From the sequence record LR745208.1: a stretch of 64,000 bases of DNA; one strand, written 5' to 3'. The notes under the pieces were generated by a model. The model had not been told where the DNA came from. It saw only the letters and a list, made by a program, of their open reading frames with translations, and did no database searches. The position numbers were made by a program, and so were the translations under genes. Each line of letters starts with the position of its first letter. The first letter of the stretch is position 1. Below are positions 18,943 to 46,550 of the stretch, one piece after another.

Positions 18943-19740
18943 CTAGATTGCGCCACCAGCTGTTCCGACTGTACTGGTACCATACCGGATTGAGCCCAGT
19001 TGGCCCACGGTGGGATCCCCACCGCTCAAAAGTTGCTCCCCGTAGGTCGAAGCAAAATCGTGCACATCGCTCACGGTGACGTCCCCGGACTCCATAATCT
19101 GACCCTGGTCTTGCGAGTAGGTGGCCGACCAGCTCGTAAACCAGCATGCCTCATACATCGTGATGATTGCGGAGTGGCCAGGAGAGGCAGCATACCCTGT
19201 AGCCCCTGTAGCTGAGGCAGACACCCCAGGGGACACATTGGGATATCGCACTGGCTGGACGCCCTGTGCAAACCCGCTCGTGGGCATGTGGGTACCAAGG
19301 TTAGCCGCACCAAGGTCATTGTCCGCAAGGGACGAGAAGACCAGCTGGTGCTCAATGTCAAATGGCCAACGGTGATGGGCCAGTGACCTGACCGGGCCGT
19401 CAACGCCAGCCGCATAGCCCACTGCCTGCCAAAGATTCGACAAATACAGAAGAGCCCGTTCCAATGATCCAGTGACAGGTTCTGTAACTGATGGAACTAA
19501 TTCAGCAATTACGTCACCCATGCCGATTCCTCGAACGGCATCGACATTTCGGCTCTGGCTTGGAGAGAAGGAACTGACCACGCCCATTTGATACAGGCTG
19601 GTTGTTCCCGACCCGAATACAGGGGCAAGAAGACGGACCTTCTGGCTCACTGCCACGCGGGTATTGGGAGAAGTCCCGTAGTCATACAGGTAACTTGAGC
19701 CCTGTGCCCCGTGTGAATGATTGGTGTCCTGATTTGGCAT
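18943..19740 (-). CDS. Tail tube protein (265 aa)
   Basis: GVVSSFSPSQSRNVDAVRGIGMGDVIAELVP and ITMYEACWFTSWSATYSQDQGQIMESGDVTV follow the tube-fold pattern of Herelleviridae-like myoviruses; downstream of the sheath. Confidence 0.75.
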   Translation of the reverse strand: MPNQDTNHSHGAQGSSYLYDYGTSPNTRVAVSQKVRLLAPVFGSGTTSLYQMGVVSSFSPSQSRNVDAVRGIGMGDVIAELVPSVTEPVTGSLERALLYLSNLWQAVGYAAGVDGPVRSLAHHRWPFDIEHQLVFSSLADNDLGAANLGTHMPTSGFAQGVQPVRYPNVSPGVSASATGATGYAASPGHSAIITMYEACWFTSWSATYSQDQGQIMESGDVTVSDVHDFASTYGEQLLSGGDPTVGQLGSIRYGTSTVGTAGGAI

Positions 19741-20420: not shown

Positions 20421-23400
20421 TCAGGTGCTGGTGACGCGCTGTGTGACCTGGATGTAGAGGAGTGGGAAGACTGGGGCGAAGTACGAATCCGCCAGCACAC
20501 CCGTTGGATCCTCCGGGTCTGGAATGACCGAGATGCCCTTGAAGGCTGCGATGATCTGCTCAGCGACTGCCCTCTTGTACATCTCCGAGAGCTGCCCCTC
20601 GATCTGTCCGAGAACTTGTGGCAGGAACTTCTGGCCCTTGAAGGGGTCCAGGACTGCCCTGACGCGACGTTGCATCTCGTCCGTGATCTGGATGACCGTT
20701 GGGGTCTTGGTCAGGATATTGGACATATCCGATGTCAGACCGTGGCGGACCTTGACGAATGGGGGCTTATTTTCCAGGACTGTGATGCCCTTGATCGCGA
20801 TCTGGTTTGCCGTTGTCGTGCTGAGGCGACGGCTAAGGGTGAAGCCAACCAGTTGGCGGCTCTCCCAGGGGGTTGCCGGGTCAATGGTTGGGGAGGTGGT
20901 TGCCGCTGCAAGAGCCGCAGCTGGGTACCGACCATCCACCAAGTAACTCTTCACCTTCCCAAAAACATCCGTGAGAGACACGGTTGCGATCTCTGGGTAG
21001 ACAAACCGGACACGGGTGGAGCCCGCGGTCTGGGCGATTAGGCCCACTTGGTCTGCCCTGGTACCTGCTGCGAACCCGAAGATTGCGGTACGCTCTGCCT
21101 TGAACCGGATGGACGATTGCACATCACAGTGGATAGACACGTTCTTGACAAGGTTCGCGGTTGCTGGGGTCAGGAACACCAACACTGTGGGGCTGAGTGA
21201 CCCTGGGAGGCAATCCCCCGCTGAGTCATCCATTGCCGTCAGGTAAGCTGCTTCCGATGCCTGTGAGGAACCGGTGGTCTTCTGTACCTGCATGGTACCG
21301 ATGACTGTTGACCCATTCAGGAAGGCAAGGTGTGCGGCCAGCGAGAGGGGGTTATCTGGAGAGACGGGGCCATACTCGTTGACCACGTCAGACAGCTTCG
21401 CGAAGAGCTTAGGAGTGAAGTCCGTCTTCGTGTAGTTGTAGCTGACGTAGTAGGCCTCCCCAATTGAGGGCTCCGACCCACCACGCTTGAAGGTCTCCAC
21501 CAAGGCGGTATCCCCTGCTGGGACATCAACCGTGTTGGACACTGTCAGCTCCAGGCCAGGAATGGCCAGGACTGGGATGTTGCTATCCGTGAGGATAGTT
21601 GTGGAGGACCGGAAGGTCAGGGTGGCATTTGATCCCGTTGGGTAGTCTAGGCCACCGTCTCGTGGAAGTATTGTGAAGGTGAGGCCCGTCACATCGTCCA
21701 CGTAAGTCTGTCCAACCGACCCATCCTGGCCTGTACCTGCGGTTGCGGTATTGAGGACCGAGGTGTTTGCGGATCCCGACCCATTTGTTGGATCTGAGGA
21801 CTTGACGAAGAAGCCATTGATGGCTGCCTCACCGTTCGCCCCATCACCGGATACCAGACCCAGGCCTGTTCCGGTTCGAAGTGCGTCCAGGGTTGTAGCA
21901 TTCGCGAAGGCAAAGCTTGATGCTGTGCCCAGGGTCCTGCTCTGGATGTACACGTACTCCTTGTTCGTGAGACCCACTTCGACGCCCGCAATTGCCTTGC
22001 TGGCGAAGTATCCTGCACCCACCGCTGAAGGGTCGAGAACCCATGAAGCATAGGTCTGAACGTGAGACATCAGGGTCGAAGCAACCTGCTTGGCCGTGAC
22101 ACCCGTTGCGGTTGCCACTGCACCTGTGGTGAACCCAAGGGTGGCATTGGCAGAGCCACTACCGATGATGAAGGTTGCCGTCTGTGAGAAGGAGTCTGTC
22201 CCTGCCCCGTAGATTCGGATACCAGCCCCCTCTTGAATTGCAACTGGGGTGATGGTTCCCGGCACTGCCGAAAAAGCTGCCTGGATGGTATTGAGGATTG
22301 AACCAGCTGTGGTCTTGGGACCAAGGGCCGTTAGAGTTCCTGCGCCAGATCCAGTGAACGTAACGGCGACCAACACCCCATTGACGGTGATATTGAAGAC
22401 ATTATTCGCCGGGAAGCTAGGATCGCTGCCATCATAGAAGCGAACCACTGGCATGCCATCTCTGGCATCCGCGAAGCCGGTTCCAATTCCATCAACCCAT
22501 CCTGGCACTCCCAGGAAAGTTGGCCCCAAGGCTGTTCCTCGATAGGCTGCCTCCCCGGTTGCTCCTGCTGGTAGACCCGCCTTTACTGCCCCTGTCCCAC
22601 CCTGTGAGGCAAGGCCTGTAATGGACAGGGCGTGGAATGGTGCAAGGGATCCGGCACCGGGCATGATACGATTGCGTAGGATCAGGCGATCGTATGGAAG
22701 TCGCCCACCCGTTGTTGCAACTGTGTGTCGGGTAGCAATTGGACCACTGTAGAGCTTGGTCTGTGCTCCGGCGGCAGCTGCCGCTGTATCGATACCAGCG
22801 ATAATTGCGAAGTCTCGGGCAGGAGTACCACCAACGATAAACTCCAGAACACCCGAGGCATCACCGGCTGCTTGGGTGAGGGTGAACCGCATCTTGCTGT
22901 CTGCGGTTGCCGTACACACGATGGCCAACCCCAGGAAGGGGGCTGCCAAGAGACCCACTGCGATTGCAATCTGAGCGGATATCTCTGCCGCCAAGGTGGC
23001 TGCGGTGTAGGTGGCTGGGGTCAGGGTCACTGTCTGGCTACCCGAAGTACCCGATGTGGCACCCGTGTAGTTAAACATGAGACGGTCATACTCGTTGATA
23101 GTAACCGTGTACCCCTGTGCGAAACTACCCGCTGCCGTGTAGTAGGGGTCCGCTGCCCCACCCGCAATAGCTGCTGCGTTGATGGCAGTAGCATATGCCG
23201 CGACCGTCACAGCACCTGCGGCTGAGGTAGCCGTGAGGGAAACCCCATCCACAAGCACCGAGACCACGTCATCCACACCGGCCACCACAGTGTAAGTGGT
23301 CTCACCGGATGCCGCAGTGTAGGCAACCTCACCACCCAGAAGAGAAGCAAAAGCTCCCGCACGTCCAACACCCGAGGGGAGAGTCAGATCAATACCACCC

Positions 23401-25379
23401 ACCCCACCCGTGCTGCCTGCGACACCATCGATGGTAACTCGAAGGTTGCTGGACTGTCCAGGAACCGTGAAGTAGGGCCCGGATGCTGGGAATGTGAACC
23501 GGGCTGGAGTCGTATCGGAAGTCTCGAACCGGACCACCACAGTCTCGTCGATTGGTGTACCCCCCTCGATGCGGGCATCTGGGAACAGCTCAGATCCCGA
23601 AGGGAAATTCACTGTTACCGTTGCAAGGTCGGTGCCCTTTGAGGTAAGAGTCACGCCGTATTTTGAGCGGCTGAGACCGTCTACGAGCGAGTAGGTACCC
23701 ACTCCCGAAGTACCAGGAGTCACACAGGTCAGTGTGTATCCACGAGACGACCCTACAAACGCCTGATCAACCAGGGTGTTGTAGTAGAAGGTGGCGTACA
23801 CCGTGGCTCCCTCAGGAACCTCAGAACCCAGGGTGATTGTCGACGTTTCGCTGTCAACCTTGAGAACCGTGACTGCACCACGATTCAGGGCATCCAGCAC
23901 CCCAAAGCCCCAGTAAGCTGTTACCAGCTCTGGCTGATCGGTCGGGAGGTCCATCCGGTCATTGGCCACTGTCAGGTACATCGAGGATCCGAGGGGATTG
24001 CTCCGGCCGTTTCCTGTCGTGGGCTGGAAAGCAAGCTGGAACTGTGTGCGGCTCTCAACCGAGACGTTACCAGAGGTTACCAGTACCGTGCTGCATGGAG
24101 AGAGGTATGCCCGATTGTCCACAAGGCTGGCGGTCACCTGGGTCGAACCGAAAGCCGTAAACCCTTCCGTGTGCAAGCCTGAAGACACCAGGGAAGCTGT
24201 TCCCCAAAGGATTGTGTCATTCTTGAGGATGTAGTCCGAGCCCTGGATGAAAACACCAGCACCGTTGCTGTTGGGAGTAATTGCAGCACGAGTGATTGCT
24301 GAGATCCCTGTGTTTGCCAAGTAATCGAAAGTGTCTTGCCACGTATTGAAGTAGTACTGGATGGTGACCGTGCTGCCCACAACTGGAGCCGCAGGAAGGG
24401 TCACCGCTCGGGTACGACCATCAACCGAAGTGGCCGTTACTGCCACCCCGTCCACTTCGACCACCAGATCGGCTGGATTCGTGGAAGTAACGCCACCACC
24501 GTCGCCGGTCACAATTGGGCCATTGAACACGTAGAAGGTACGGTTTCGAGCCGTCGACTGATTGGCCACGAAACCGAGAACCCCATTCGCGTTCCCGTCA
24601 CCCAGAACAATCGAAACATCCGCGGTCAAACGAATGCAAACCCGCCCAAGGTAGTTGGTATAGGCTGTTGCTACCAGGGACCCGATACCCGAGGCACCGT
24701 TGATCGTTGCCACCACCACTGCCGCTGTGAAACTGACAGCACTCGTGGGCATCGTGATGCTGACTTGGGCCAGACCATCCACGGCAACCTTGAAGGTATC
24801 TGTCGTGCTCAGCACAAACGCGAAGTTCTCTCCCGTTTGGCCATCTAGAATAGCTGCGGTTGTGGTCACCTGAGACGAAACGTCATCGGTCACCTGTGTA
24901 TCCGTACGGTCGAAGAAGTAGGTGCAGAGCACCACATCCGTTGCAAGTGGGTACTCAGAGATCTCAACCAAACCCGTTGCTGAGTCCAGACCTAGCACCA
25001 CAATGGCGTCACCATTCACCGTGACGGACACGGCCGAGGTATCCGTTGCAGCTGTTCCCGTACCGTCCCCAGAGACGATCGGGAAGTTCTTCACCTGGAA
25101 GCGATTGGACGTCCCGTCAAACGCCCCAAGGGTAATTGACCCATCGGGGTTGACAGAAACCACCATCCTATCGGCTTCATCCTCGCTGACAATCTGCTGG
25201 TCCACCGTCGAGGAACTCCCACGAACTACTGGGAGGTTGCTCTGTGACAGTGTCTCCAATCCCGTTCCAATGAACAGGGGAAGAACTGGAGGAACCGAGG
25301 GAGGAACTGGAGGAGCCCCGAAAAAGGTCTGTGTGTAGACACCGGGAGGGGCATAACCGCCGTTTAGCAAACTTGGCAT
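20421..25379 (-). CDS. Tail sheath protein, unusually large (1652 aa)
   Basis: N-terminus MPSLLNGGYAPPGVYTQT; C-terminal sheath domain (VNEYGPVSPDNPLSLAAHLAFLNGS, GITVLE, FKGQKFLP, FAPVFPLLYIQVT); upstream of the tube. Start placed at ATG 25379. Confidence 0.85.
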   Translation of the reverse strand: MPSLLNGGYAPPGVYTQTFFGAPPVPPSVPPVLPLFIGTGLETLSQSNLPVVRGSSSTVDQQIVSEDEADRMVVSVNPDGSITLGAFDGTSNRFQVKNFPIVSGDGTGTAATDTSAVSVTVNGDAIVVLGLDSATGLVEISEYPLATDVVLCTYFFDRTDTQVTDDVSSQVTTTAAILDGQTGENFAFVLSTTDTFKVAVDGLAQVSITMPTSAVSFTAAVVVATINGASGIGSLVATAYTNYLGRVCIRLTADVSIVLGDGNANGVLGFVANQSTARNRTFYVFNGPIVTGDGGGVTSTNPADLVVEVDGVAVTATSVDGRTRAVTLPAAPVVGSTVTIQYYFNTWQDTFDYLANTGISAITRAAITPNSNGAGVFIQGSDYILKNDTILWGTASLVSSGLHTEGFTAFGSTQVTASLVDNRAYLSPCSTVLVTSGNVSVESRTQFQLAFQPTTGNGRSNPLGSSMYLTVANDRMDLPTDQPELVTAYWGFGVLDALNRGAVTVLKVDSETSTITLGSEVPEGATVYATFYYNTLVDQAFVGSSRGYTLTCVTPGTSGVGTYSLVDGLSRSKYGVTLTSKGTDLATVTVNFPSGSELFPDARIEGGTPIDETVVVRFETSDTTPARFTFPASGPYFTVPGQSSNLRVTIDGVAGSTGGVGGIDLTLPSGVGRAGAFASLLGGEVAYTAASGETTYTVVAGVDDVVSVLVDGVSLTATSAAGAVTVAAYATAINAAAIAGGAADPYYTAAGSFAQGYTVTINEYDRLMFNYTGATSGTSGSQTVTLTPATYTAATLAAEISAQIAIAVGLLAAPFLGLAIVCTATADSKMRFTLTQAAGDASGVLEFIVGGTPARDFAIIAGIDTAAAAAGAQTKLYSGPIATRHTVATTGGRLPYDRLILRNRIMPGAGSLAPFHALSITGLASQGGTGAVKAGLPAGATGEAAYRGTALGPTFLGVPGWVDGIGTGFADARDGMPVVRFYDGSDPSFPANNVFNITVNGVLVAVTFTGSGAGTLTALGPKTTAGSILNTIQAAFSAVPGTITPVAIQEGAGIRIYGAGTDSFSQTATFIIGSGSANATLGFTTGAVATATGVTAKQVASTLMSHVQTYASWVLDPSAVGAGYFASKAIAGVEVGLTNKEYVYIQSRTLGTASSFAFANATTLDALRTGTGLGLVSGDGANGEAAINGFFVKSSDPTNGSGSANTSVLNTATAGTGQDGSVGQTYVDDVTGLTFTILPRDGGLDYPTGSNATLTFRSSTTILTDSNIPVLAIPGLELTVSNTVDVPAGDTALVETFKRGGSEPSIGEAYYVSYNYTKTDFTPKLFAKLSDVVNEYGPVSPDNPLSLAAHLAFLNGSTVIGTMQVQKTTGSSQASEAAYLTAMDDSAGDCLPGSLSPTVLVFLTPATANLVKNVSIHCDVQSSIRFKAERTAIFGFAAGTRADQVGLIAQTAGSTRVRFVYPEIATVSLTDVFGKVKSYLVDGRYPAAALAAATTSPTIDPATPWESRQLVGFTLSRRLSTTTANQIAIKGITVLENKPPFVKVRHGLTSDMSNILTKTPTVIQITDEMQRRVRAVLDPFKGQKFLPQVLGQIEGQLSEMYKRAVAEQIIAAFKGISVIPDPEDPTGVLADSYFAPVFPLLYIQVTQRVTST

Positions 25380-25473
25380 TGGGAGTCTCCAGAGGGAAGG
25401 AAAGCGGCGAAAGCTCAAATGGTAGACCTGGAGAATCCTGGTCCAAGGGAAAGCTCACGACACAACCGCTCTA

Positions 25474-35807: not shown

Positions 35808-36608
35808 TCACCGAGCCATGAAGGGCTTCCCCATGAGGGCCAAGGAGCCTTCCAATTGAGGCATCTGCTCGTAATGGGCTGCCCTGAGGGCCACATTCAG
35901 GTTTGTCACCACCTGTGTCATCGGGGCTCCAGGACTCCGTACCAGTTCCTTCAACAGGTAGTACGTACAGGCCCCGTTGTATCGGCCATTGATGAAGGCA
36001 TCAGCCGATGTCTGGTTGCTCTTGCACCCACTGATCAGAGCCACGTTGAGGGGCACTCCCGGCATCCCAAGACCCATTCCCTGTGGGGTGATACCCGCCT
36101 CCTTGGCCGTCTGGACCCCCCAGCTAATGTCCTCAGGCATTGGCATCGAACGGGGAACGGAGTTGCTGAAGGAGCGATCCAGCGTTCCACTGTGACAACT
36201 ATCGGAAACCCATACAAAATTCACCCCGACTGGCACTTTGGAGAACATCTGATTGAACTCCTTATCCCGAATCATCGTGTCATCAGACCAGTTGAAGTTT
36301 TGAGGGCAAATTGCCTCATCCAAATTGTCCACTTCTCCCGCGGGGTTACGAGTGGGGACCTGCACCCCATGCCCTGAAAAATGGAAGAACAACCTATCCC
36401 CTGGCTTGGCTCCGTCCACCAACCAGTGCAACCTGTCGACAATTGCCTGCTTGGTCGCCCGACCATCCACCAAGAGCCGAATGTTGGCCCTCGGCATGGT
36501 ACAATGGTCCATCAGATAGTGGGCCATGTCTGTGATATCGTTGACACACCCATTAAGAGGGCAGCCTGGGTACTTGTTGATCCCAACCATCAAAGATTTA
36601 TCAGTCAT
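35808..36608 (-). CDS. Metacaspase / peptidase C14 (caspase-like)
   Basis: ALxxGINxY-like KSLMVGINKY, LNGCVND, catalytic His in HFSGHG, catalytic Cys in DSCHSG, SGCKSNQTSAD, QMPQLEG. Start placed at MTDKS. Confidence 0.92.
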   Translation of the reverse strand: MTDKSLMVGINKYPGCPLNGCVNDITDMAHYLMDHCTMPRANIRLLVDGRATKQAIVDRLHWLVDGAKPGDRLFFHFSGHGVQVPTRNPAGEVDNLDEAICPQNFNWSDDTMIRDKEFNQMFSKVPVGVNFVWVSDSCHSGTLDRSFSNSVPRSMPMPEDISWGVQTAKEAGITPQGMGLGMPGVPLNVALISGCKSNQTSADAFINGRYNGACTYYLLKELVRSPGAPMTQVVTNLNVALRAAHYEQMPQLEGSLALMGKPFMAR

Positions 36609-36631
36609 GCTAGAGCCCGATGATAGACGGC

Positions 36632-37165
36632 CTAATGAGAAACGAACGGGATACACCTGTAACTGAGTCGGCGCCCGGCACCCACCAAAAAGGAAACCCC
36701 AGTCCGCTTCCAGATCTCGGTTGTGAGGGCCAGACGGGCCTCCTCATCCATGTCATCGAGGATATGCTCGGTATAGAACTTGTGGGTCAGGGAGGGCCCC
36801 TCAGGACGTGGCTCCCCAGGAGTGCAGATCCCGTTCACGTAGTGGGCACTGCGGACTGTAGGCACACCAGCTAATGGGTTGGGAATGCCAGACACATACA
36901 GCTTGTGGGGCCAGCCATACTTCCAGTCTGCCACTTCCATGGTGATCAGGTCGGGATGTGCCTGTGTGAGGTTGAACAGGTCCTCGGGGTTCAAAGATCC
37001 ACAATAATCGCAGGTCCTGAAGGGGTAGATGTAAGGCCCATAGTCATCGGGACGGGCAACACAGCCCTTCGCCGACACCTCAGGTGCCCGCCATAGCCCC
37101 TTGGCTAGATGAATGAATGGACTGGGAGTTCCCTCGTGACAAGTATGTCGGTCTGGCCATCGCAT
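36632..37165 (-). CDS. Hypothetical protein with CxxC motif (177 aa)
   Basis: RTCDYCGSL...ADWKYGWPHKLY; ORF in operon. Confidence 0.55.
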   Translation of the reverse strand: MRWPDRHTCHEGTPSPFIHLAKGLWRAPEVSAKGCVARPDDYGPYIYPFRTCDYCGSLNPEDLFNLTQAHPDLITMEVADWKYGWPHKLYVSGIPNPLAGVPTVRSAHYVNGICTPGEPRPEGPSLTHKFYTEHILDDMDEEARLALTTEIWKRTGVSFLVGAGRRLSYRCIPFVSH

Positions 37166-37194: not shown

Positions 37195-38679
37195 CTAGCT
37201 ATCTGAAATGCTGTAGGGGGCTGGCTTGGCCCGGAGAGCCTGTTTGCGGTGGCTTGCCCGCATCTCCGCGTGGTGCTTGGCGTCATCGGTCTCCCCCACA
37301 GCCTCATATGCCTGTTGGGCCATGTGATGGGCATGGGCAGCATCGAAATGCTGCTCCTTGTCAAAATCCTCCTCATCAGAGGCCATGGAGAGTTCGTTGG
37401 CCAAGTTGGCCCACTGGAGAGCTGATTTGCCCTTGAACAACTTGGATGACTGCAAATACTTGGAGGCTATTCTGGCAGCAGATTGGGACATGACTACTCC
37501 TCCTGACTCTCTCGAAGCCATCGTGGTCAATTCCGCTGGGGTGAACACCGCTTGAACAATGTCCGATGCCTTGGCCCATTCGACCCGGGCATCATAGCCC
37601 GCAACAGGTCCCAGCATGGAGGGTTGCTGTCGCCAATTGTCCAAATGTTTCAACTTCCCACCCAGCCTCGAAACCACAGACCCAATGGCTGGGCGAATAT
37701 CCTCCGGCTCCTCCCCACGAGCCAAAGCACTACGGTCCAACAACTCCCCATAGAAGGTTAGGGCACTTGAAAAAACGGCACCCTTAGCGATGAACTCGGG
37801 GAAGATTTCAAGGAGCCCCACACTTGGTGCATTCCTATTGAGGTAAACCTGAATTATGTCCTCCAGCTCCTCGCTGAATGGACTGTACAGTGCCCTATCA
37901 TCCAGGAAGAATTCCTTAGGCATTCGAGTCACAAGTGCGCCCAAAACCAACTCCGGCGTTGGTGCCTTCAGTTTCTTTAGGACAGCCCAGATTCCGGCCC
38001 CAACCCCCTCTGACAACCACTTCTTGTTCTCGGGCCGAGAGAAGTACTTGACCAGCCAATTCTGGACCGTCCCCGTCAATGCAGCTTGATGCCTCGCGGC
38101 TACCCTGGCTGCTTGAGAACCCATTGACACATTCTTTCTATCATCTCCGACCCAGAACCCCACCTCATTGAAGGCCACCGGAACCGCGTCCACCCTCTGT
38201 AGGGGCATATCAGCATCCTTGGGCGTGTAAGACAGGGTCATGTGAGGAGTATACCCATGGTTATCTTTCCAGGTCACCCCAAGGATCTTGAGAGCTTGGC
38301 CCACCCGGTCCCGGAACTCATTGAGCCCTGGCACATCCACACTGAGGAAGACCGGGTCTCCCCCATCCTCAGCCTGCCCAGCAAACCGCCCAATACCTCC
38401 CAGGACCCCCACTAAAGGCTGACTGGAGGCTGCTACCTCTCGGAGGACACCCAAAATAGCGTCGGGTGATACCGCAAGGTCAGCTGCCTTACCAAGGGCG
38501 AACAGGGTAATGTGCAGGTTTTCCACGGGCTCTGCACCCTCCCCCTCCAAGACAACCTGATTGGCTACCTCAACGGGAATGGGCAGACAGATCATCGATC
38601 CAGTATGGGCTGCCTCAAGAGCCCTACGAGCTACTTTGTGCACCAACAGGGTGTGCATTATGGGGTCCCACACGGGCAT
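37195..38679 (-). CDS. Multidomain protein with N-terminal 2H phosphoesterase (2'-5' RNA ligase/Acb1-like) domain
   Basis: Two HxT motifs, NLHITLF (~38501-38520) and TPHMTLSY (~38227-38250), with typical spacing; two further unknown domains. Start ATG 38679 (TTG 38688 or ATG 38658 possible). Confidence 0.85.
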   Translation of the reverse strand: MPVWDPIMHTLLVHKVARRALEAAHTGSMICLPIPVEVANQVVLEGEGAEPVENLHITLFALGKAADLAVSPDAILGVLREVAASSQPLVGVLGGIGRFAGQAEDGGDPVFLSVDVPGLNEFRDRVGQALKILGVTWKDNHGYTPHMTLSYTPKDADMPLQRVDAVPVAFNEVGFWVGDDRKNVSMGSQAARVAARHQAALTGTVQNWLVKYFSRPENKKWLSEGVGAGIWAVLKKLKAPTPELVLGALVTRMPKEFFLDDRALYSPFSEELEDIIQVYLNRNAPSVGLLEIFPEFIAKGAVFSSALTFYGELLDRSALARGEEPEDIRPAIGSVVSRLGGKLKHLDNWRQQPSMLGPVAGYDARVEWAKASDIVQAVFTPAELTTMASRESGGVVMSQSAARIASKYLQSSKLFKGKSALQWANLANELSMASDEEDFDKEQHFDAAHAHHMAQQAYEAVGETDDAKHHAEMRASHRKQALRAKPAPYSISDS

Positions 38680-38706
38680 CTCTCTCAATGGGTCGGGATA
38701 GGCCAG

Positions 38707-40070: not shown

Positions 40071-40334
40071 ATGAACATGTGCACCAAGCCCACCCCAAAC
40101 AACCTGGACACCCTCTTTGCCAAGATCGCCAAGGAAGAGCTGTATATCGAAACCTTGGAACCCCGCCACATGGACGGCCTGGACTTCCATGAGGTGGGCG
40201 TGTGGGGGCTCAAGCGAGCCTTGAAGCGTGCCTACGAAGCCGGGGCAGCCAGTCAATGGCTCCCGACCACTGGGCCCAAGACCCGCCGTGTAAGAAAACC
40301 AAGATCCGCCCCGTCAAAAACAGAAAAACCATGA
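40071..40334 (+). CDS. DUF6900-like small protein
   Basis: IAKEELYIETLEPRHMDGLDFHEVGVWGLKRALKRAYEAG matches the IAxxxLxIETLExRxxDxLDFHDVxVWxxxxALxxAYxAG pattern. Confidence 0.7.
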   Translation: MNMCTKPTPNNLDTLFAKIAKEELYIETLEPRHMDGLDFHEVGVWGLKRALKRAYEAGAASQWLPTTGPKTRRVRKPRSAPSKTEKP

Positions 40335-40954
40335 ACCCCACCCCACACATCGAAAACCGGGAAACCTTCTTCGCCCGCCTTCGCCCCATCCTGGCCCCCT
40401 CGGAGTTGCTCAACGTCGAAGTCGCCTACGCGCTCGCCAAACATGCACACCGGGCACAAACCCGGAAGGAACTCGACGATGAGGGCCGCCCCCTCCGCTA
40501 CTTCGAGCACCTGCGTGGAACAGCCCTGATTGCCATCGAGGAGCTGGACCTTGTGGAGCCAGAGATCATCATCTCCGCCCTGATGCACGATGCGCTGGAG
40601 GATACCCGAGACATCTCGGCCCCCATGCTTGAGCACCTGTTTGGGGCCGAAGTCGCTAAGATCGTGCTGCTCCTCACCAAGGACCCCAAGGAGGGCTACT
40701 ACGAGCGACTCCTCCATTGGGGCACCGAGAAGGTCTGGCTGGTCAAGGGCTGCGACCGGCTACAGAACCTCCGCCACCTGAAGGACACCACCCCTGCCTT
40801 CCAAGCCAAGCAACTGGCCGAAACCCGGAAGGTCATCTACCCCATGACCCTCAAAATGGTCTTGCAGGCACGTGGCTCCAAGTATGAGTCCGCTGCCACT
40901 GCCCTCCAGGACAAAATCTACCAAACTGTCGAGTCTTTCGAGGTAGCAACGTGA
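40331..40954 (+). CDS. HD-domain small alarmone hydrolase-like protein (SpoT/Mesh1-like)
   Basis: AYALAKHAHRAQTRK, YFEHL, ALMHDALEDT, VLLLTK, VKGCDRLQNLR. Start placed at ATG 40331 (ATGA overlap). Confidence 0.85.
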   Translation: MNPTPHIENRETFFARLRPILAPSELLNVEVAYALAKHAHRAQTRKELDDEGRPLRYFEHLRGTALIAIEELDLVEPEIIISALMHDALEDTRDISAPMLEHLFGAEVAKIVLLLTKDPKEGYYERLLHWGTEKVWLVKGCDRLQNLRHLKDTTPAFQAKQLAETRKVIYPMTLKMVLQARGSKYESAATALQDKIYQTVESFEVAT

Positions 40955-41243: not shown

Positions 41244-41495
41244 ATGCTCCCCACCCATGTCATCTGCGAAACCTACCCAGCCTACGTCAACCACATCCGC
41301 CCCGTCACCAAGGCCACCAAACTCAAGCCAGGAGGGGGACTCAAAGACATCCAAGCCCTCTGTGGCTACACCTTCAAAGAAGGCTGGGACAAGCCCGAGG
41401 TGGTCCTCACCCACCGCTACAGCGAGGCCATGGTGACCGGCAATGGCTCCAATTACTGCGCGGAATGCGTGAAGCTCTACCGGGAAGCCCCGTAG
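41244..41495 (+). CDS. Hypothetical protein (83 aa)
   Basis: AGAGG SD; ALCG...YCAECV putative Zn ligands. Confidence 0.55.
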   Translation: MLPTHVICETYPAYVNHIRPVTKATKLKPGGGLKDIQALCGYTFKEGWDKPEVVLTHRYSEAMVTGNGSNYCAECVKLYREAP

Positions 41496-41532
41496 AGTCC
41501 CATGCCCCTGCCCTGATAGTCCCCCTATCAGG
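41475..41532. terminator. Two tandem hairpins separating the sigma28-driven genes from the leader-peptide genes
   Basis: CTCTAC-c-GGG-aag-CCC-c-GTAGAG (41475-41497) and CCTGATAG-tcccc-CTATCAGG (41512-41532); the second contains the CCCCTATC motif. Confidence 0.45.
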
Positions 41533-41542
41533 ACCCCCAAAC

Positions 41543-41824
41543 ATGACCCTGCGTTCCAAACTCATCCGTCTCGCCCATGACAATCCCGAGCTTAGGCCCC
41601 AGCTGCTCCCACTCTTGAAGGAGGCTGCCCAAGCCTTCAACAAGCCCAATGTCACCAAGTGGATGAGGAATCATGCCAGCGAATTTGATACCGCCACCGA
41701 ACTGGCCGAAGACGCTGCCGATGAGTTCGGAGCCAAAGACAAGGGAGGCCCCCTGGACGATGACACCCACTGGATCTGGGACCTTGCCCAGGACGCCATG
41801 AGTTGGTCCAAAGACCACGCCTAA
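41543..41824 (+). CDS. Small protein with conserved N-terminal leader (93 aa)
   Basis: MTLRSKLIRLAHDNPELRPQLLPLLKEAA leader shared with the next gene. Confidence 0.7.
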   Translation: MTLRSKLIRLAHDNPELRPQLLPLLKEAAQAFNKPNVTKWMRNHASEFDTATELAEDAADEFGAKDKGGPLDDDTHWIWDLAQDAMSWSKDHA

Positions 41825-41837
41825 CAGGAACCCACCA

Positions 41838-42536
41838 ATGACCACCCTTCGATCCAAACTCATCCGTCTCGCCCATTCGGACCCGGCTCTCCGGCCCCAT
41901 CTCCTTCCCCTGTTGGCAGACCGCACAGCAGCCCTCCCCTCTGGCACCGTCCAGATGTTCCTGGAGGTCCTGAAATCGAAACTGACCCAGCATGACAAGC
42001 GGGTGAGCGAGGCGGAAGCCAAGAAGGGCCGGTCGAATATCTACCGCCTTGGGTTGCTCCTGGAAGCGGCCCACAAGGTAGATGGCGACGTACATAGTGT
42101 CATGGACCAGGACACCCCAGAGGCCCTGGAGGTGCTCAAGAAGTCCTTGGATCGCCGCTTTGAGGCGACCTTCCCACCCGTGAAGGCCACCCTTAAGCAA
42201 ATCGACGAGTTCCTCAAGTCGGGCAAGAAACCCTCCCTCATCAAGAGCGCCGCCGCCCGTTGGACCCCCAAGGCGAAGGTTTGGTACCAGCTCCCCGACA
42301 GGGATGGGAGTGACTTTTACTTCTACGCCACTGAGATCCAGAAGAATGGTGGTGCCAAAGGGGTCATGGTCGAATGGCGTCTAGGCAGCCGAGGAAAACG
42401 CCCACAGCCCCGGGCCAAAAGCTACAGCACAGGTCAGCTCTTTGAGGGTGATAACAGAGTCTACAAGGAAATCCCAGTGAGTGATGTTCCCGAGGAAGTG
42501 GTTTCGGAAGCTAAATCCTCAGGGAAGATGGGCTAG
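41838..42536 (+). CDS. Two-domain protein with conserved N-terminal leader (232 aa)
   Basis: MTTLRSKLIRLAHSDPALRPHLLPLLADRTAA leader; internal KSAA junction. Confidence 0.7.
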   Translation: MTTLRSKLIRLAHSDPALRPHLLPLLADRTAALPSGTVQMFLEVLKSKLTQHDKRVSEAEAKKGRSNIYRLGLLLEAAHKVDGDVHSVMDQDTPEALEVLKKSLDRRFEATFPPVKATLKQIDEFLKSGKKPSLIKSAAARWTPKAKVWYQLPDRDGSDFYFYATEIQKNGGAKGVMVEWRLGSRGKRPQPRAKSYSTGQLFEGDNRVYKEIPVSDVPEEVVSEAKSSGKMG

Positions 42537-43141: not shown

Positions 43142-44575
43142 CTATACTGACTGCATCACGTCTATCAGAAACCGTCGAATCCTCTCGGCTACCTCTTGGG
43201 GGCGCTTATTCACATCTCGCTCCCAAAGGATCAAGCACCGCATTCCACAATCCTTGTAGAAGGCGACCACATCATCATGGTGTGCCTCTCGGGACTTCCC
43301 AGTCTTCTCAGGGCCGTGCCACCAGTCACCAAACGCCTCAATGACCGCTGGGATGCGAAACAACTTGATGTCTGCCCCATTACGATGAGCTTCCATCTGC
43401 CCCCCCGTCAGGACGATGAAGTCCGGGTACCTGTCCTTAGGAGTCCCCGGACGCCTAACAGGATACACCCGGCTAGGACGTGATCGGTCCCCTGTGAAGA
43501 GAACCCCAGGAGGAGACAACTCCTGTACCCGTTGTTCCAACCCATTTGGAGACTCATGCTTCTGATTGCGCCACAGGAACTGAGGGGGATAGGGCACCCC
43601 ATACTTGCCATTCCATACCTCCTTGATCTTGAACCACACAGCTTCTACCTTCGAGGGGTTATCAGTCCCGTACTTCTCCAACCACGTCTCTCGGGCTTTG
43701 GCCAAGACATCAGGGCACTTCTGGGAATGCTGGCCATTGTGGTTGGCTAGGTTGGTCTCGTAGGCTCGCTTCTGTACTTCTGGCAAAAGCAATGGGGTAC
43801 GGACCCCAAAAACCTTCAAATTGCTGGTCTCCCAGACCAATTTGCCTCCAGGAGACATCATGGGGTGCCGGACACCCCAGTTCTTCATTGAGGTATCCTT
43901 GAACTGCACCTTGAAGGTGTCCGTTAGAAGATAGTGACCGACCCCATACTTCTCTTGATTGGTCTGTATCCTCTTCGCCATTACCTCTGGGGCCTGATTG
44001 GGATTCTCAACCCCAAACCGTTCGAGATTGGAGACACGGATCCGCCTCTGAATCTCCTCAGACCCAAATGGGTTCTCGGCCCCATACCTCTCCAAATTGG
44101 TAGCAGATGCCCTGGCCTTGATCTCTGGAGACTGAAGGCCCCAACCACCATATTTGATAAGCATTGTCTCCTTGGACTGAGCCTTCACATCCCCCGCCTG
44201 GAACACATTGTCCACTCCATACCTGTCCTGAACAGTGGCCACCCTCCGCTGAAGTGTCGCCCCAATTCTCACAGAGGCTTCAGGGAACTTGGCCCGGTAG
44301 GTTTCTTCGGTCATACCATGGACCTTCTTCAGGTGGTCCATCATCCGCTTGAACCGCATATCCCTACCCGTAAGGAAACACTCCTGGCATCGAACCCAAT
44401 CTGTTCCTTCCACCAACCCGTCAGCGTATGGGCCCCGCTTGAAGTAGGCCTCCCAATTGAACTCTGCGTAAGGAATACCGATCTCTGTGTTCCAGGAAAG
44501 GCAGGCTAAAGCATGGCTAGGGAGTCCCTTGTGGGACATTGACTTCTTACAGGCAGGGCAGAGGACATCACTCAT
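43142..44575 (-). CDS. Free-standing homing-endonuclease-like protein: Zn fingers, ~10 T(N)xE(R/K)YGxxNP repeats, C-terminal Vsr/PD-(D/E)xK nuclease
   Basis: CPAC and CQEC..HLKKVH Zn fingers; ~23-aa repeats (TNLERYGAENPFG, SNLERFGVENPNQ, TWLEKYGTDNPSK...); YPDFIVL...VIEAFGDWWHG...CLILWERD. Confidence 0.8.
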   Translation of the reverse strand: MSDVLCPACKKSMSHKGLPSHALACLSWNTEIGIPYAEFNWEAYFKRGPYADGLVEGTDWVRCQECFLTGRDMRFKRMMDHLKKVHGMTEETYRAKFPEASVRIGATLQRRVATVQDRYGVDNVFQAGDVKAQSKETMLIKYGGWGLQSPEIKARASATNLERYGAENPFGSEEIQRRIRVSNLERFGVENPNQAPEVMAKRIQTNQEKYGVGHYLLTDTFKVQFKDTSMKNWGVRHPMMSPGGKLVWETSNLKVFGVRTPLLLPEVQKRAYETNLANHNGQHSQKCPDVLAKARETWLEKYGTDNPSKVEAVWFKIKEVWNGKYGVPYPPQFLWRNQKHESPNGLEQRVQELSPPGVLFTGDRSRPSRVYPVRRPGTPKDRYPDFIVLTGGQMEAHRNGADIKLFRIPAVIEAFGDWWHGPEKTGKSREAHHDDVVAFYKDCGMRCLILWERDVNKRPQEVAERIRRFLIDVMQSV

Positions 44576-44703: not shown

Positions 44704-45597
44704 TTAAAGGAAATTCCGAGGTGAAAGCACACCCCTACCCACCGAACTTCCAAATGCCGATTTTATCCCTATCCCATACTTAGGCTGTGAAATTCCTCTC
44801 AAGAACTTAACTGTCCTAGCCTTAGCCTCCGCCGCCTTATCAAACTGGGATTCCGCGTTCTGCTTGAGGGACTCATACTTGGAGGATCGCTCAATGGACA
44901 ACGAAATGCCGCCAATTGAGTAGTCGAACTCTTCATGGACCATCATAGCCGCAAGGGCAAAGCAGGCGTGGGAGATGGCCTCCCAGAGGATGGCGGTCCG
45001 CCACGCTGGCTTTTCCATGACGAGCTTATCAATGGTGTCGAGCCCCTCAGTCATGGGAGGCATCATATTAAACCAGTCCAATCCCCGCTCAAGGTAACAA
45101 AATAGCTCATCCTCTCGCCATATCTGGCCAAAGACCCGATTGTAAGCCCCAATGTTCCCCTCAGCCTCTGGAGGAGCGAAGTGATAATCGCGATCAGGGC
45201 AGTTGTGACCCGTTATTGAGGACTTGGACAGCACAAGGTTGTGGTTGCCCTCAACCGTGATGTCATACATGACATCCCTAGGTGGGAGTGGATGGAGCCC
45301 CCTGACTCGACTGTAGGCAATCTGACCTCCAACAACGGCCAATACATAAGCACCTGCTTGAAGGTCCTTCGCCTCAACAGCCTCTGTTGGTGAGGTATAG
45401 ATCCGATGTCCGCCAGTAACCACAGATGCCCCATAATCCGTTACCAATTCCCAAACCGTCTCAGCCCCAATCTGTGCTTGGTGCACTCTTTCAACCTGAC
45501 GCCACTCTACTTCCCCACCAGGAGAGACAGAACGGACTCGGAGGGTTCCGGCTCGATAGGAGGCTTGGAGTTTTTCTTTTTGCGTCTCAGTAAGCAT
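44704..45597 (-). CDS. C-terminal half of fractured head-tail adaptor-like gene: C-intein (132 aa) + C-extein (165 aa)
   Basis: GAGGAG SD + ATG; intein blocks B (VVTGGHRIY), F (MYDITVEGNHNLVL) and G (GHN/C); C-extein CPDRDYHFAPP...FDYSIGGISLSIERSSKYESL. Confidence 0.85.
   Translation of the reverse strand: MLTETQKEKLQASYRAGTLRVRSVSPGGEVEWRQVERVHQAQIGAETVWELVTDYGASVVTGGHRIYTSPTEAVEAKDLQAGAYVLAVVGGQIAYSRVRGLHPLPPRDVMYDITVEGNHNLVLSKSSITGHNCPDRDYHFAPPEAEGNIGAYNRVFGQIWREDELFCYLERGLDWFNMMPPMTEGLDTIDKLVMEKPAWRTAILWEAISHACFALAAMMVHEEFDYSIGGISLSIERSSKYESLKQNAESQFDKAAEAKARTVKFLRGISQPKYGIGIKSAFGSSVGRGVLSPRNFL
45202..45597 (-). other. C-intein (long half) of an atypically split intein
   Basis: 132 aa ending His-Asn (45207-45202), followed by Cys+1 (45201-45199). 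Confidence 0.85.
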
Positions 45598-46550
45598 TCC
45601 TTCAGCTCCTCTTCGGTCCAGATGGCAAACCCCCAGCCGCGGGCGGAAGCTTCCATCTCTGCTACCCTAAGGCGTTCGATAGCCTCATCATTCTCTGGGC
45701 GTGACTTGAGTACATAGGCTGGCTTCACCTCCACCAACACAATCCTACCATCTGAGTAGGTGACCAGGAAATCTGGAAGGATCCATTTCCCGACCCATTT
45801 CTCCAGGGTTATTGACGAAAGGTACAGCACCTTCTCATATTCATAACCAAGCACCCTAGGGTCCCCCTCCAAATGATCTATGGCAGCTACCTCATAGGAG
45901 CTTCTCACGTACCCACGGGGCTCAACCCCTTTGGGTGTATCCATCCACTGCCCTTTGCCATGACTGTTGTGGTCAGGATGCTCTTTCATCCAGAGGGTCT
46001 TTTGCTTCGACAGGAGGGCACGATGTTCGGGAGCATTCATGGCCTCAAGAGTCTTGGCCCTGAATGCTGGGTCTTTCCAATTGGCCTTCTGCCTCTCTGA
46101 CATCATGGCAAGAACCTCAGGAGTGAAGGATTCTCTCTGTTTGGCAATATCCTCAGGGGTGCGAACCCTTCCCTTATGGAAATCGAAAAACCCATCCTCC
46201 CATAGTTTTTTGAGCTTAACAGAGGCCGTGGGGTACTTCCTGCCCTTTCCTGCCCGGCCATTTTTTGCTGAGTTATCAAGTCTATTCTGCCTAGAAGCTG
46301 GGTTCCACATTGCTCGGGTATATTTCTGAATCGCAGATAACCCTGTAATCTCCCGCATCTTTTTCCAAGGAGTTCCCGCCGCATGAAGTTCCGTGATAAT
46401 TAGGGATCGGACCTCCAGGATAAGGTCTCTCCGGTCTGCTGGAAGATGGTTTCTCTTCACAAATTCTTCATTGGTTACCCCATGTTTCTCCAACATGGGG
46501 ACTAGAAGTGGATGTGGGACTGTAACAACAGGCTTAGGTGATTTGCGCAT
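45507..46550 (-). CDS. Free-standing TnsA-like PD-(D/E)xK endonuclease between the split-intein halves
   Basis: RSSYEVAAIDHLEGDPRVLGYEYE...ILPDFLVTYSDGRIVLVEVKP...GWGFAIWTEEEL; NUMOD3-like segments; own ATG; overlaps the C-intein start by 91 nt in another frame. Confidence 0.8.
   Translation of the reverse strand: MRKSPKPVVTVPHPLLVPMLEKHGVTNEEFVKRNHLPADRRDLILEVRSLIITELHAAGTPWKKMREITGLSAIQKYTRAMWNPASRQNRLDNSAKNGRAGKGRKYPTASVKLKKLWEDGFFDFHKGRVRTPEDIAKQRESFTPEVLAMMSERQKANWKDPAFRAKTLEAMNAPEHRALLSKQKTLWMKEHPDHNSHGKGQWMDTPKGVEPRGYVRSSYEVAAIDHLEGDPRVLGYEYEKVLYLSSITLEKWVGKWILPDFLVTYSDGRIVLVEVKPAYVLKSRPENDEAIERLRVAEMEASARGWGFAIWTEEELKECLLRRKKKNSKPPIEPEPSESVLSLLVGK

What the first reader, a model, noticed from the sequence alone, without database searches (positions are those of the whole stretch)
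41543..42536. Shared ~28-aa N-terminal leader on unrelated proteins: a candidate capsid-packaging/processing tag
Seen: two adjacent genes begin M(T)TLRSKLIRLAHxxPxLRPxLLPLL and end the segment in KEAA or RTAA, after which the sequences diverge completely. The DNA shares a 24-nt identical core (TCCAAACTCATCCGTCTCGCCCAT). The 232-aa protein has a second KSAA junction before another domain. The pair lies after two hairpins and behind the CCCCTATC motif found before structural genes, despite being on the plus strand. Established: T4 internal proteins use a short N-terminal capsid-targeting sequence removed by the prohead protease. Inference: this may be an address-tag system that loads diverse cargo into the head for injection.
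Basis: inference. Interest (0 to 1): 0.7.

Follow-up and report, generated by a model that had tools for sequence, protein, structure and literature searches.

The report
Shared 27-residue tag in huge phages
Two neighbouring phage genes begin with the same short peptide, which also occurs on thousands of otherwise unrelated proteins of uncultured giant phages and is most likely an address label that brings them all to one viral assembly, perhaps the inside of the head.

Summary
Genes A (41543-41824) and B (41838-42536) share an N-terminal peptide, LRSKLIRLAHxNPxLRPHLLPLLK, and are otherwise unrelated.

The window lies in LR745208.1, a 485-kb uncultured phage whose capsid protein resembles that of phage G.
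- The genome has 11 copies of the peptide on 11 different proteins.
- 69 IMG/VR loci hold 136 distinct copies.
- A profile search finds 4,280 protein clusters.
- The peptide has no match in Pfam or in PDB sequences, and no other GenBank phage has it.
- A pattern scan of 185,579 species genomes found only four MAG contigs.

Synonymous codons differ between copies, so selection acts on the peptide, not on the DNA. AlphaFold predicts two short helices with high confidence.

The peptide is not only a leader. It also occurs at C-termini and inside proteins, and small proteins with charged linkers carry 2-7 copies.

Attached domains include ART-PolyVal, a 2H phosphoesterase, an RNA ligase, pentapeptide repeats and DUF2958. 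Two tagged genes lie in the protease / scaffold-like / capsid gene cluster.

My best reading is a position-independent docking or sorting tag for one phage-made assembly, most likely the procapsid interior. Packaging into the head and cleavage of the tag are untested. No conserved T4-type cleavage site is present. The CCCCTATC 8-mer is not enriched.

The parts
41543..41824 (+). Gene A, 93 aa: tag followed by a 64-aa helical domain
   Evidence: ORF; also called as a 93-aa gene on a JGI contig. AlphaFold gives helices at 3-13 and 15-32 with pLDDT 88-95 for the first 30 residues.
41543..41629 (+). Tag module of gene A (residues 1-29, MTLRSKLIRLAHDNPELRPQLLPLLKEAA)
   Evidence: Local HMM score 63.2 bits. 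The logo shows conservation from the first Leu to the Lys after LLPLL, a weak x-A-[A/G] after that, and background composition beyond.
41630..41821 (+). Cargo domain of gene A
   Evidence: The same domain recurs without a tag in L018 2749-3303, and N-terminal to a tag in L054 11083-12330. No Pfam match; one weak PHROG match, E 0.14.
41838..42536 (+). Gene B, 232 aa: tag, helical domain X, linker, beta-rich domain Y
   Evidence: AlphaFold secondary structure and pLDDT. The gene caller started it at Met40.
41838..41933 (+). Tag module of gene B and its junction (residues 1-32, ...LLPLLADRTAA)
   Evidence: Local HMM score 59.5 bits. B has Ala-Asp where most copies have Lys-x.
41934..42242 (+). 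Domain X of gene B (about residues 33-135)
   Evidence: 50-54% identical to P0002-P0004, which are 128-130 aa and carry a different N-terminus instead of the tag.
42243..42257 (+). KSAAA inter-domain linker of gene B
   Evidence: The homologues end just before it. pLDDT is below 50 at residues 134-141.
42258..42533 (+). Domain Y of gene B (residues 141-232)
   Evidence: Weak homologues lie directly after a tag in L025 8831-9976 and P0122; P0061, which carries two tags, also has one. No significant structural match.
41555..41578 (+). 24-nt identical core, copy 1
   Evidence: Over the whole module, A and B are only 72% identical in DNA.
41853..41876 (+). 24-nt identical core, copy 2
41475..41497 (.). 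Hairpin 1, overlapping the stop codon of the upstream 83-aa ORF
   Evidence: Inverted repeat with 10-nt arms, 90% complementary.
41512..41532 (.). Hairpin 2, CCTGATAG-TCCCC-CTATCAGG, which contains the CCCCTATC motif
   Evidence: Perfect 8-nt arms. The 8-mer is not enriched in the window.

Best explanation
The shared segment is a self-contained peptide module of about 27 residues. Its consensus is x-L-R-S-K-[LV]-I-R-L-A-H-x-N-P-x-L-R-P-H-L-L-P-L-L-K-x-A, predicted as two short helices joined at N-P.

It works as a position-independent docking or sorting tag. All copies bind the same surface on a phage-encoded partner. Proteins with one copy ('clients', such as genes A and B) are thereby recruited to one phage-made assembly. 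Small proteins made of 2-7 copies joined by linkers rich in Lys, Glu and Asp act as multivalent linkers of that assembly.

The most likely destination is the interior or core of the procapsid. [quoted passage not shown]

Shown here:
- the module exists and is under selection as a peptide;
- it is modular and found almost only in viral sequence;
- it sits on unrelated domains, at either end or inside;
- some tagged genes lie in the head-gene cluster.

Inferred, not shown:
- that it binds a common partner;
- that the partner belongs to the procapsid;
- that the cargo is injected.

Nothing here shows that the tag is cleaved off.
For: 1. Scale and cargo diversity. There are 11 copies on 11 different proteins in LR745208.1, 136 distinct copies in 69 IMG/VR loci, and 4,280 clusters at 50% identity with E<=1e-3, of which 995 have E<=1e-10.

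2. Selection on the peptide. Among the 11 genomic copies, mean DNA identity is 71%, and only 46% of identical residues use the same codon. The logo has sharp edges, with Ala12, Arg19 and Pro24 invariant.

3. Modularity. Among 127 distinct tagged ORFs in the loci, 96 have a single N-terminal copy. The rest have internal, C-terminal or multiple copies, though some scored as internal probably just start at GTG or TTG. Proteins with several copies have linkers of 16% Lys, 13% Glu and 9% Asp. Gene A's cargo and B's domain Y recur in other positions relative to the tag.

4. New and almost entirely viral. Pfam has no match and PDB sequences give nothing better than E 0.46. A degenerate pattern hits only 4 contigs, all from MAGs, among 185,579 species genomes, against 96 stretches in IMG/VR.

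5. Structure. AlphaFold predicts helices at residues 3-13 and 15-32 with pLDDT 88-95. In B, a low-confidence linker follows before the cargo.

6. Cargo types. They include ART-PolyVal (40.7 bits, cut-off 31.2), 2H-SAK, RNA_ligase, pentapeptide repeats, DUF2958 and WGR, with RelA_SpoT and LPD1 as weak matches. These overlap the domains of 'polyvalent proteins', which were argued to be packaged and injected (PMC5512222).

7. Head context. The gene order is protease, a 422-aa scaffold-like protein rich in Ala, Glu and Lys, tagged gene P0017, a 228-aa gene, then the major capsid protein. The capsid protein matches PDB 6WKK (phage G gp27) at E 1e-59 and PHROG 2522 at E 2e-47. Tagged gene P0008 lies about 5.5 kb downstream. 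Tagged genes also lie within 10 kb of the capsid or protease genes in L023, L044, L060, L069 and L078.

8. Precedent. Short targeting peptides load diverse proteins into heads in T4 and P1. SPN3US gp53 and gp54 share identical N-termini, which the authors compare with the T4 targeting sequences (PMC5694885, PMC9024508).
Against: - There are no virion data. No cultured phage carries the module: tblastn of GenBank phages finds only LR745208.1. The 75 kb of Tunturi_5 and the 21 kb of phage G that I examined contain none.
- No conserved T4-type cleavage site is present. Glu at the position after L-K occurs in only 30% of copies. Copies at both ends or between domains are unusual for a removed propeptide.
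- Only 8 of 69 loci (12%) have head genes within 10 kb, and 3 of those 8 are copies of this same genome. That is barely above the 4-7% expected by chance.
- The three multi-copy linker proteins I checked lie among NUDIX, NAD-synthase, GNAT and two-component genes, not head genes.
- The neighbours of genes A and B are HD_4, DUF6900, a LigT/2H enzyme, a caspase-like peptidase and homing-endonuclease-like genes.
- A 402-kb relative with an 82% identical capsid protein has no canonical module in its head locus. It also does not appear in the pattern scans, as far as they were listed.
Confidence: 0.4

Rival explanations
1. The module is a sorting tag, but its destination is not the capsid. It recruits clients to another phage-built assembly in the infected cell, such as a replication or assembly factory or a condensate. 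The multi-copy charged proteins would hold that assembly together, in the way a common Rubisco-binding motif organises the algal pyrenoid (that comparison is from my own knowledge).
For: The pattern of single-copy clients and multi-copy linker proteins fits this. Most tagged genes, and all three multi-copy genes I checked, lie among metabolic or accessory genes rather than head genes. Position independence and the lack of a conserved cleavage site also fit a tag that stays attached.
Against: No candidate shell or compartment gene was identified. Two tagged genes are embedded in the head-gene cluster. Some cargo types resemble proteins predicted to be injected.
Confidence: 0.22
2. The module associates with itself. 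The helix pair forms dimers or bundles, so it oligomerises its carriers, and proteins with several copies form polymers. No separate receptor exists.
For: Architectures with N- and C-terminal copies, or N-terminal and internal copies, are common among the top profile hits. Mini-proteins such as P0116 (63 aa) consist of only two modules and a linker. The sequence shows a leucine-rich amphipathic helix pair, and the helices are predicted with confidence.
Against: Invariant Arg and Pro residues, with constraint on almost every face of both helices, suggest recognition by a fixed partner rather than a generic zipper. About three quarters of carriers in the loci have a single copy on small monomer-like domains. 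The structure tools returned no contact data to test self-pairing.
Confidence: 0.13
3. The module binds nucleic acid or a hub protein of the host, such as the nucleoid, membrane, a chaperone or a polymerase. It would tether phage enzymes there.
For: The module is basic, with conserved Arg5, Arg/Lys10, Arg19 and Lys27. Several cargo domains act on nucleic acids: RNA ligase, the 2H phosphoesterase, a ParB-like motif, and pentapeptide repeats, which are known DNA mimics (my own knowledge).
Against: Arg5 and Arg19 are almost never replaced by Lys, and the hydrophobic and proline positions are equally fixed. That is atypical for electrostatic binding to DNA or membrane. No known DNA-binding family matches. 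A motif that binds a host protein would not obviously need 2-7 copies joined by acidic linkers.
Confidence: 0.1
4. The module is a degenerate structural repeat unit, similar to an LRV or HEAT repeat. It merely caps or extends helical domains and has no sorting role.
For: It looks loosely like LRV repeats ([VI]R..A..NP...LL). One carrier, P0135, has a module followed directly by true LRV-like repeats, and one member of the set matches Pfam LRV.
Against: Pfam LRV and HEAT models do not match the module in A or B, even at E<=1. The module is separated from its cargo by low-confidence linkers. It sits on all-beta as well as helical domains, and occurs alone in mini-proteins.
Confidence: 0.05

Closest known systems
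T4 capsid-targeting sequence on internal proteins IPI-III and Alt; the N-terminal 30-residue packaging signal of P1 DarB
   Same: A short peptide shared by, or transferable to, unrelated proteins sends them into the prohead for delivery with the DNA. In both those systems it is N-terminal, as in most copies here. One cargo type, an ADP-ribosyltransferase, is shared with T4 Alt (PMC5694885, PMC9024508, PMC5512222).
   Different: No sequence relationship was detected, since the module is found in no other GenBank phage. It is longer, at about 27 aa against 10-20. It also occurs at C-termini, internally and in multiple copies. No conserved L/I-x-E cleavage site is present. Packaging has not been shown.
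Cargo-loading peptides of encapsulins, encapsulation peptides of bacterial microcompartments, and the C-terminal capsid-targeting tail of the HK97 protease (from my own knowledge)
   Same: These are short helical peptides at either terminus, joined by flexible linkers, that dock diverse cargo to the inner face of a protein shell. For encapsulins and HK97 the shell has the HK97 fold.
   Different: Those peptides are usually encoded next to the shell gene and mark only a few cargo types. Here the tag marks thousands of protein clusters scattered over genomes of 100-485 kb, and dedicated multi-copy linker proteins exist. The receptor is unknown.
Polyvalent proteins and MuF-fused effectors of phages (Iyer et al. 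2017, PMC5512222)
   Same: The repertoire of effector-like domains overlaps: ART-PolyVal, 2H phosphoesterase and RelA/SpoT, plus weak or motif-level signs of LPD1, ParB-like and zincin-like domains. Domains are also shuffled combinatorially.
   Different: Polyvalent proteins join many domains into one large polypeptide or fuse them to a head protein. Here most domains are separate small proteins that each carry the same tag.
Motif-guided assembly of condensate organelles, such as the Rubisco-binding motif of the algal pyrenoid or the CsoS2 repeats of carboxysomes (from my own knowledge)
   Same: One short motif occurs once in client proteins and many times in disordered, charged linker proteins, and its position in the protein does not matter.
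   Different: That is a different organism and a different motif, and the partner here is unknown. The resemblance is in logic only.

Membership tests
T4-type capsid-targeting sequence (CTS) | N-terminal propeptide of 10-20 residues on internal head proteins | tested here: inconclusive
   About 27 residues. N-terminal only in 96 of 127 distinct tagged ORFs, but also C-terminal, internal or multi-copy. Whether the carriers are head proteins is unknown.
T4-type capsid-targeting sequence (CTS) | Removed by the prohead protease at a conserved L/I-x-E site | tested here: not met
   L26-K27-x28 has Glu in only 34 of 114 copies, with T, K, S, Q or A elsewhere. Gene B has L-A-D. Actual cleavage cannot be tested here.
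T4-type capsid-targeting sequence (CTS) | Sequence relationship to the T4 or P1 signals | tested here: not met
   tblastn of the module, and of a four-module protein, against 50,697 GenBank phage records hits only LR745208.1.
T4-type capsid-targeting sequence (CTS) | Sufficient to load a foreign protein into the head | not testable with these tools
   Requires tag-reporter fusions and procapsids or virions.
Shell-targeting peptides (encapsulin cargo-loading peptides, microcompartment encapsulation peptides, HK97 protease tail) | Short amphipathic helix at either terminus, joined to the cargo by a flexible linker | tested here: met
   Helices at 3-13 and 15-32 with pLDDT 88-95. In B, pLDDT is below 50 at residues 24-30, just before the cargo. 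N- and C-terminal copies both occur.
Shell-targeting peptides (encapsulin cargo-loading peptides, microcompartment encapsulation peptides, HK97 protease tail) | Cargo genes encoded next to the shell gene | tested here: inconclusive
   P0017 and P0008 flank the capsid gene, and five other phage contigs also have tagged genes within 10 kb of head genes. Only 8 of 69 loci in all show this.
Shell-targeting peptides (encapsulin cargo-loading peptides, microcompartment encapsulation peptides, HK97 protease tail) | Binds the inner face of the shell protein | not testable with these tools
   No multimer prediction or binding assay was available.
Polyvalent proteins (Iyer et al. 2017) | Between 2 and 15 effector domains in one polypeptide, drawn from a characteristic domain set | tested here: not met
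   Most carriers have a single domain. The domain set overlaps: ART-PolyVal is above its cut-off and 2H-SAK matches, while RelA_SpoT and LPD1 fall below their cut-offs.
LRV / HEAT-like helical repeats | Matches the Pfam LRV or HEAT models and occurs as tandem arrays that form a solenoid | tested here: not met
   No Pfam match for A or B at E<=1. Spacing between copies ranges from 3 to 845 residues.

The most novel reading that the evidence does not exclude
Phage-G-like huge phages use a general protein-sorting code. One 27-residue tag marks thousands of client enzymes. Dedicated proteins made of several tags joined by charged disordered linkers, together with an unknown receptor, build a scaffold-and-client body, either an internal capsid core or a cytoplasmic condensate. 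That body defines which proteins travel with, or work beside, the genome. The tag would then be a readable label for the whole set of sorted proteins in uncultured giant phages, and a portable handle for loading proteins into very large capsids.
Probability: 0.25. Interest if true: 0.9.

Novelty: new variant of a known kind. Interest (0 to 1): 0.74.

Why it matters
If the tag is a sorting signal, three things follow.
- The packaged or co-localised proteins of a whole clade of uncultured 100-485-kb phages could be listed directly from sequence.
- The thousands of unknown domains that carry the tag would become candidate host-takeover or counter-defence proteins.
- The tag would be a compact peptide that could be reused to load proteins into very large capsids.

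It would also extend the idea of a capsid-targeting sequence, known from a few proteins in T4 and P1, to a position-independent, multivalent system on a much larger scale. Even if the destination is not the capsid, a virus-specific peptide module under strong selection in over 4,000 protein clusters, with no Pfam or PDB counterpart, is a clear gap in current annotation.

Tried and rejected
- **Recent duplication or DNA repeat:** rejected. The 11 genomic copies share only 71% DNA identity, and only 46% of identical residues use the same codon.
- **An RNA- or translation-level signal at the 5' end:** rejected, because C-terminal and internal copies exist.
- **CCCCTATC as an enriched promoter word:** not supported. 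CTATC is not linked to gene starts genome-wide, although it is frequent upstream of tagged genes.
- **Pfam and PHROG scans of genes A and B and other carriers:** no family covers the module.
- **Literature search for the motif strings, the accession, Tunturi_5 and jumbo-phage targeting peptides:** nothing relevant.
- **Structure search with both AlphaFold models:** no significant match. B's model has only moderate confidence, mean pLDDT 65.
- **Finding the prohead protease family by PDB sequence search:** no hit.
- **Resemblance between the protease's C-terminal tail (...EARTLIRLASLL...) and helix 1 of the tag:** too weak to score with the module profile. I keep it only as a lead.
- **Expectation that multi-copy linker proteins would lie beside head genes:** not borne out in the three contigs checked.
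- **Tool failures:** One alignment meant for structure prediction was misaligned by MAFFT and discarded.
Full report
**1. The observation**

The window holds two adjacent plus-strand ORFs: gene A (41543-41824, 93 aa) and gene B (41838-42536, 232 aa). Both begin M(T)TLRSKLIRLAHxxPxLRPxLLPLL. A continues with KEAA and B with ADRTAA.

The identical 24-nt core occurs exactly twice, at 41555 and 41853, where shuffles give none. Beyond the shared segment the two proteins have no detectable similarity.

The 'KSAA' site in B is a genuine domain boundary. Three metagenomic homologues of B's middle domain (P0002-P0004, 50-54% identical) lack the leader and end at ...KKPSLI. AlphaFold gives low confidence at residues 134-141, between a helical domain and a beta-rich one.

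Two small hairpins precede gene A. The CCCCTATC 8-mer is not enriched in the window: 5 found against 3.0 expected. Here it is simply part of the second hairpin.

**2. Where the window comes from**

Gene B matches LR745208.1, an unannotated 485,034-bp 'uncultured phage', at 100% identity. Window position 41838 corresponds to record position 351838.

The phage's major capsid protein lies outside the window, at record 396,421-397,293.
- It matches the solved phage G capsid protein (PDB 6WKK, gp27) at E 1e-59, and PHROG 2522 'major head protein' at E 2e-47.
- Its closest cultured relative is Tunturiibacter phage Tunturi_5, which infects an Acidobacteriota host, at 47.8% identity. Phage G is 37% identical.

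Inside the window, the 1665-aa ORF at 20421-25418 (minus strand) is a tail-sheath homologue. The ORF at 18943-19740 is a homologue of a Tunturi_5 virion protein.

Genes A and B sit in a small plus-strand islet of about six genes, from roughly 39.8 to 42.5 kb. It includes a DUF6900 protein and an HD_4 protein. The islet is flanked by a LigT/2H-like gene, a caspase-like peptidase, a DUF7487 gene and a TnsA-like gene.

**3. The leader is a widespread module, not a duplicate pair**

- A profile built from the first examples finds 11 strong copies across the whole record, at record positions 15, 21, 31, 226, 276, 351.5, 351.8, 391, 399, 432.5 and 433 kb. Each is on a different protein.
- Ten copies directly follow the start codon. 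One lies about 345 residues into a 588-aa ORF.
- A leader alignment recovered 69 loci from IMG/VR contigs, many of them 100-485 kb long. These loci hold 136 distinct copies.
- A full HMMER search of 1.84 billion cluster representatives finds 4,280 proteins at E<=1e-3 and 995 at E<=1e-10.
- A strict degenerate DNA pattern hits 96 stretches in IMG/VR. In one genome each of 185,579 bacterial and archaeal species it hits only four contigs, all from MAGs.
- No other GenBank phage has the module. Pfam has no model for it. No PDB sequence matches better than E 0.46.

**4. What the module looks like**

The logo is sharply bounded. Conservation starts at a helix-capping S/T/D/N, then runs through L-R-S-K-[LV]-I-R-L-A-H-x-[NQK]-P-x-L-R-P-H-L-L-P-L-L-K. 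A weaker x-A-[A/G] follows, and composition is at background from the next residue on. Ala12, Arg19 and Pro24 are invariant in 104-114 sequences, and ten more positions are above 90%.

The 11 copies in this genome use different synonymous codons: 71% DNA identity, with the same codon at only 46% of identical residues. The conservation is therefore selection on the peptide, not a DNA repeat or recent gene conversion.

AlphaFold, given a 59-sequence module alignment, predicts helices at 3-13 and 15-32 with pLDDT 88-95. In B the module is followed by a low-confidence linker.

On a helical wheel, the second helix has its leucines on one face and its three prolines (i, i+4, i+8) on the other. This follows from the sequence alone.

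**5. It is not only an N-terminal leader**

Among 127 distinct tagged ORFs in the loci, 96 have one N-terminal copy. The others carry copies at the extreme C-terminus, between domains, or in several places. Some of those scored as internal probably just start at GTG or TTG.

The top profile hits have 2-7 copies. Many are small proteins made only of modules joined by linkers containing 16% Lys, 13% Glu and 9% Asp, for example P0116 (63 aa), P0031 and P0025. Internal copies tend to be preceded by K-x-A-S and followed by K-x-A-A.

Domains move relative to the tag.
- Gene A's cargo domain occurs untagged in L018, and upstream of a tag in L054.
- B's C-terminal domain follows a tag directly in P0122 and in L025 8831-9976. 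P0061, which carries two tags, also has a copy.

Three other short motifs co-occur in these proteins: YLxxHPxADxxxHxV, GCEKLPxGPMRxNC and DEPYMKGxFT.

**6. The cargo**

Most attached domains have no Pfam or informative PHROG match. Those that do include ART-PolyVal (above its cut-off), 2H-SAK, RNA_ligase, pentapeptide repeats, DUF2958, DUF7007, DUF7717, WGR and zinc ribbons. RelA_SpoT and LPD1 match weakly.

Several of these belong to the domain set of 'polyvalent proteins', which Iyer et al. argued are delivered with the DNA (PMC5512222). T4 Alt, a packaged ADP-ribosyltransferase, is the classic example cited in that paper.

**7. Link to head genes**

In LR745208.1 the head cluster reads as follows:
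- a protease of 474 aa, homologous to the Tunturi_5 head maturation protease and to phage G gp19;
- a 422-aa scaffold-like protein rich in Ala, Glu and Lys;
- tagged gene P0017;
- a 228-aa gene;
- the major capsid protein;
- an ORF rich in homing-endonuclease domains;
- four small genes;
- tagged gene P0008.

Tagged genes also lie within 10 kb of the capsid or protease genes in five other phage contigs. However, only 8 of the 69 loci include head genes at all. Three multi-copy linker proteins lie among metabolic and accessory genes. A 402-kb relative with an 82% identical capsid protein shows no canonical tag in its head locus or in the listed pattern scans.

**8. Interpretation**

The data firmly establish a peptide module that is new, almost entirely viral, strongly selected and position-independent, and that sits on unrelated domains. 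The simplest mechanism consistent with all features is a docking or sorting tag recognised by one common partner. Proteins with one copy would be clients, and proteins with several copies and charged linkers would be multivalent linkers.

The procapsid interior is the leading destination, for three reasons:
- the T4, P1 and SPN3US precedents;
- the effector-like cargo;
- the two tagged genes inside the head cluster.

I put about 0.7 on 'common docking tag' and about 0.4 on 'docking tag that loads the capsid'.

Cleavage of the tag is unsupported. A T4-type L-x-E site is present in only 30% of copies, and internal or double-ended copies argue against a simple propeptide.

The rivals are a non-capsid assembly, self-association, binding to nucleic acid or a host hub, and a plain structural repeat. 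They are listed with their tests in the Rival explanations section.

**9. Novelty and verdict**

Targeting peptides for phage heads are known. This sequence family, its scale, its position independence and the dedicated multi-copy linker proteins are not described in Pfam, in the PDB or in the literature I could search.

I rate it a new variant of a known kind, and of high interest. The main limit is that every carrier is uncultured, so function must be tested by reconstitution or metaproteomics.

Noticed in passing
outside the window: LR745208.1 396,421-397,293 (-); L085 3656-4531: The phage's major capsid protein is a close relative of phage G gp27 (PDB 6WKK, E 1e-59). It is 47.8% identical to that of Tunturiibacter (Acidobacteriota) phage Tunturi_5. 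Two of the four MAG contigs carrying the tag were binned as Acidobacteria or Terriglobia, which hints at an Acidobacteriota host.
   Followed up: partly
window 20421-25418 (-) and 18943-19740 (-): The 1665-aa ORF is a tail-sheath homologue of Tunturi_5 gp326, about three times the usual sheath length. The 265-aa ORF matches Tunturi_5 virion structural protein gp329.
   Followed up: partly
window 41838-41954: The public gene call for B (P0001, 193 aa) starts at Met40 and omits the tag. Tags may be under-counted in automatic annotations.
   Followed up: yes
LR745208.1, upstream of the tagged genes at record 15269, 20732, 226077, 275658, 351543 and 390948: CTATC, often as CTATC(C)AGG..CCCC about 18-20 nt before the ATG, lies within 70 nt upstream of 6 of the 10 tagged genes that start with the tag. 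CTATC is not linked to gene starts genome-wide. It may be a shared regulatory or leader element, or a remnant of ancient duplication.
   Followed up: partly
proteins P0025, P0031, P0036, P0057, P0136; L013, L023, L055 and L059 ORFs: Three further short motifs recur beside the tag in charged, probably disordered proteins: YLxxHPxADxxxHxV, GCEKLPxGPMRxNC and DEPYMKGxFTxxE. Their roles are unknown.
   Followed up: no
LR745208.1 401,413-399,992 (-); L090 6998-8548: The prohead protease has a C-terminal extension of about 185 aa ending ...GRKPNSSEARTLIRLASLLSAHK, and this tail is conserved in a 402-kb relative. The tail faintly resembles helix 1 of the tag, but does not score with the module profile.
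   Followed up: partly
window 17682-18863 (-), 43142-44575 (-), 44704-45597 (-), 45507-46550 (-); L085 4735-8424: Many selfish-element genes are present: a homing endonuclease/HNH gene, a DUF7487 gene, a weak intein-like match, a TnsA-like endonuclease, and a 1229-aa ORF with LAGLIDADG and HNH domains right after the capsid gene.
   Followed up: no
window 37195-38688 (-), 35808-36656 (-), 40331-40954 (+): The neighbours of the pair include a LigT/2H phosphoesterase with a weak Acb1 (anti-CBASS) match, a Peptidase_C14 caspase-like protein and an HD_4 domain protein. These may be counter-defence or signalling genes.
   Followed up: no
L090 (IMGVR_UViG_3300028422_000919, 402 kb): This relative has an 82% identical capsid protein and a 57% identical protease domain. 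It shows no canonical tag in the 15-kb head locus and does not appear in the listed pattern scans. The tag may have been gained or lost within the clade.
   Followed up: partly
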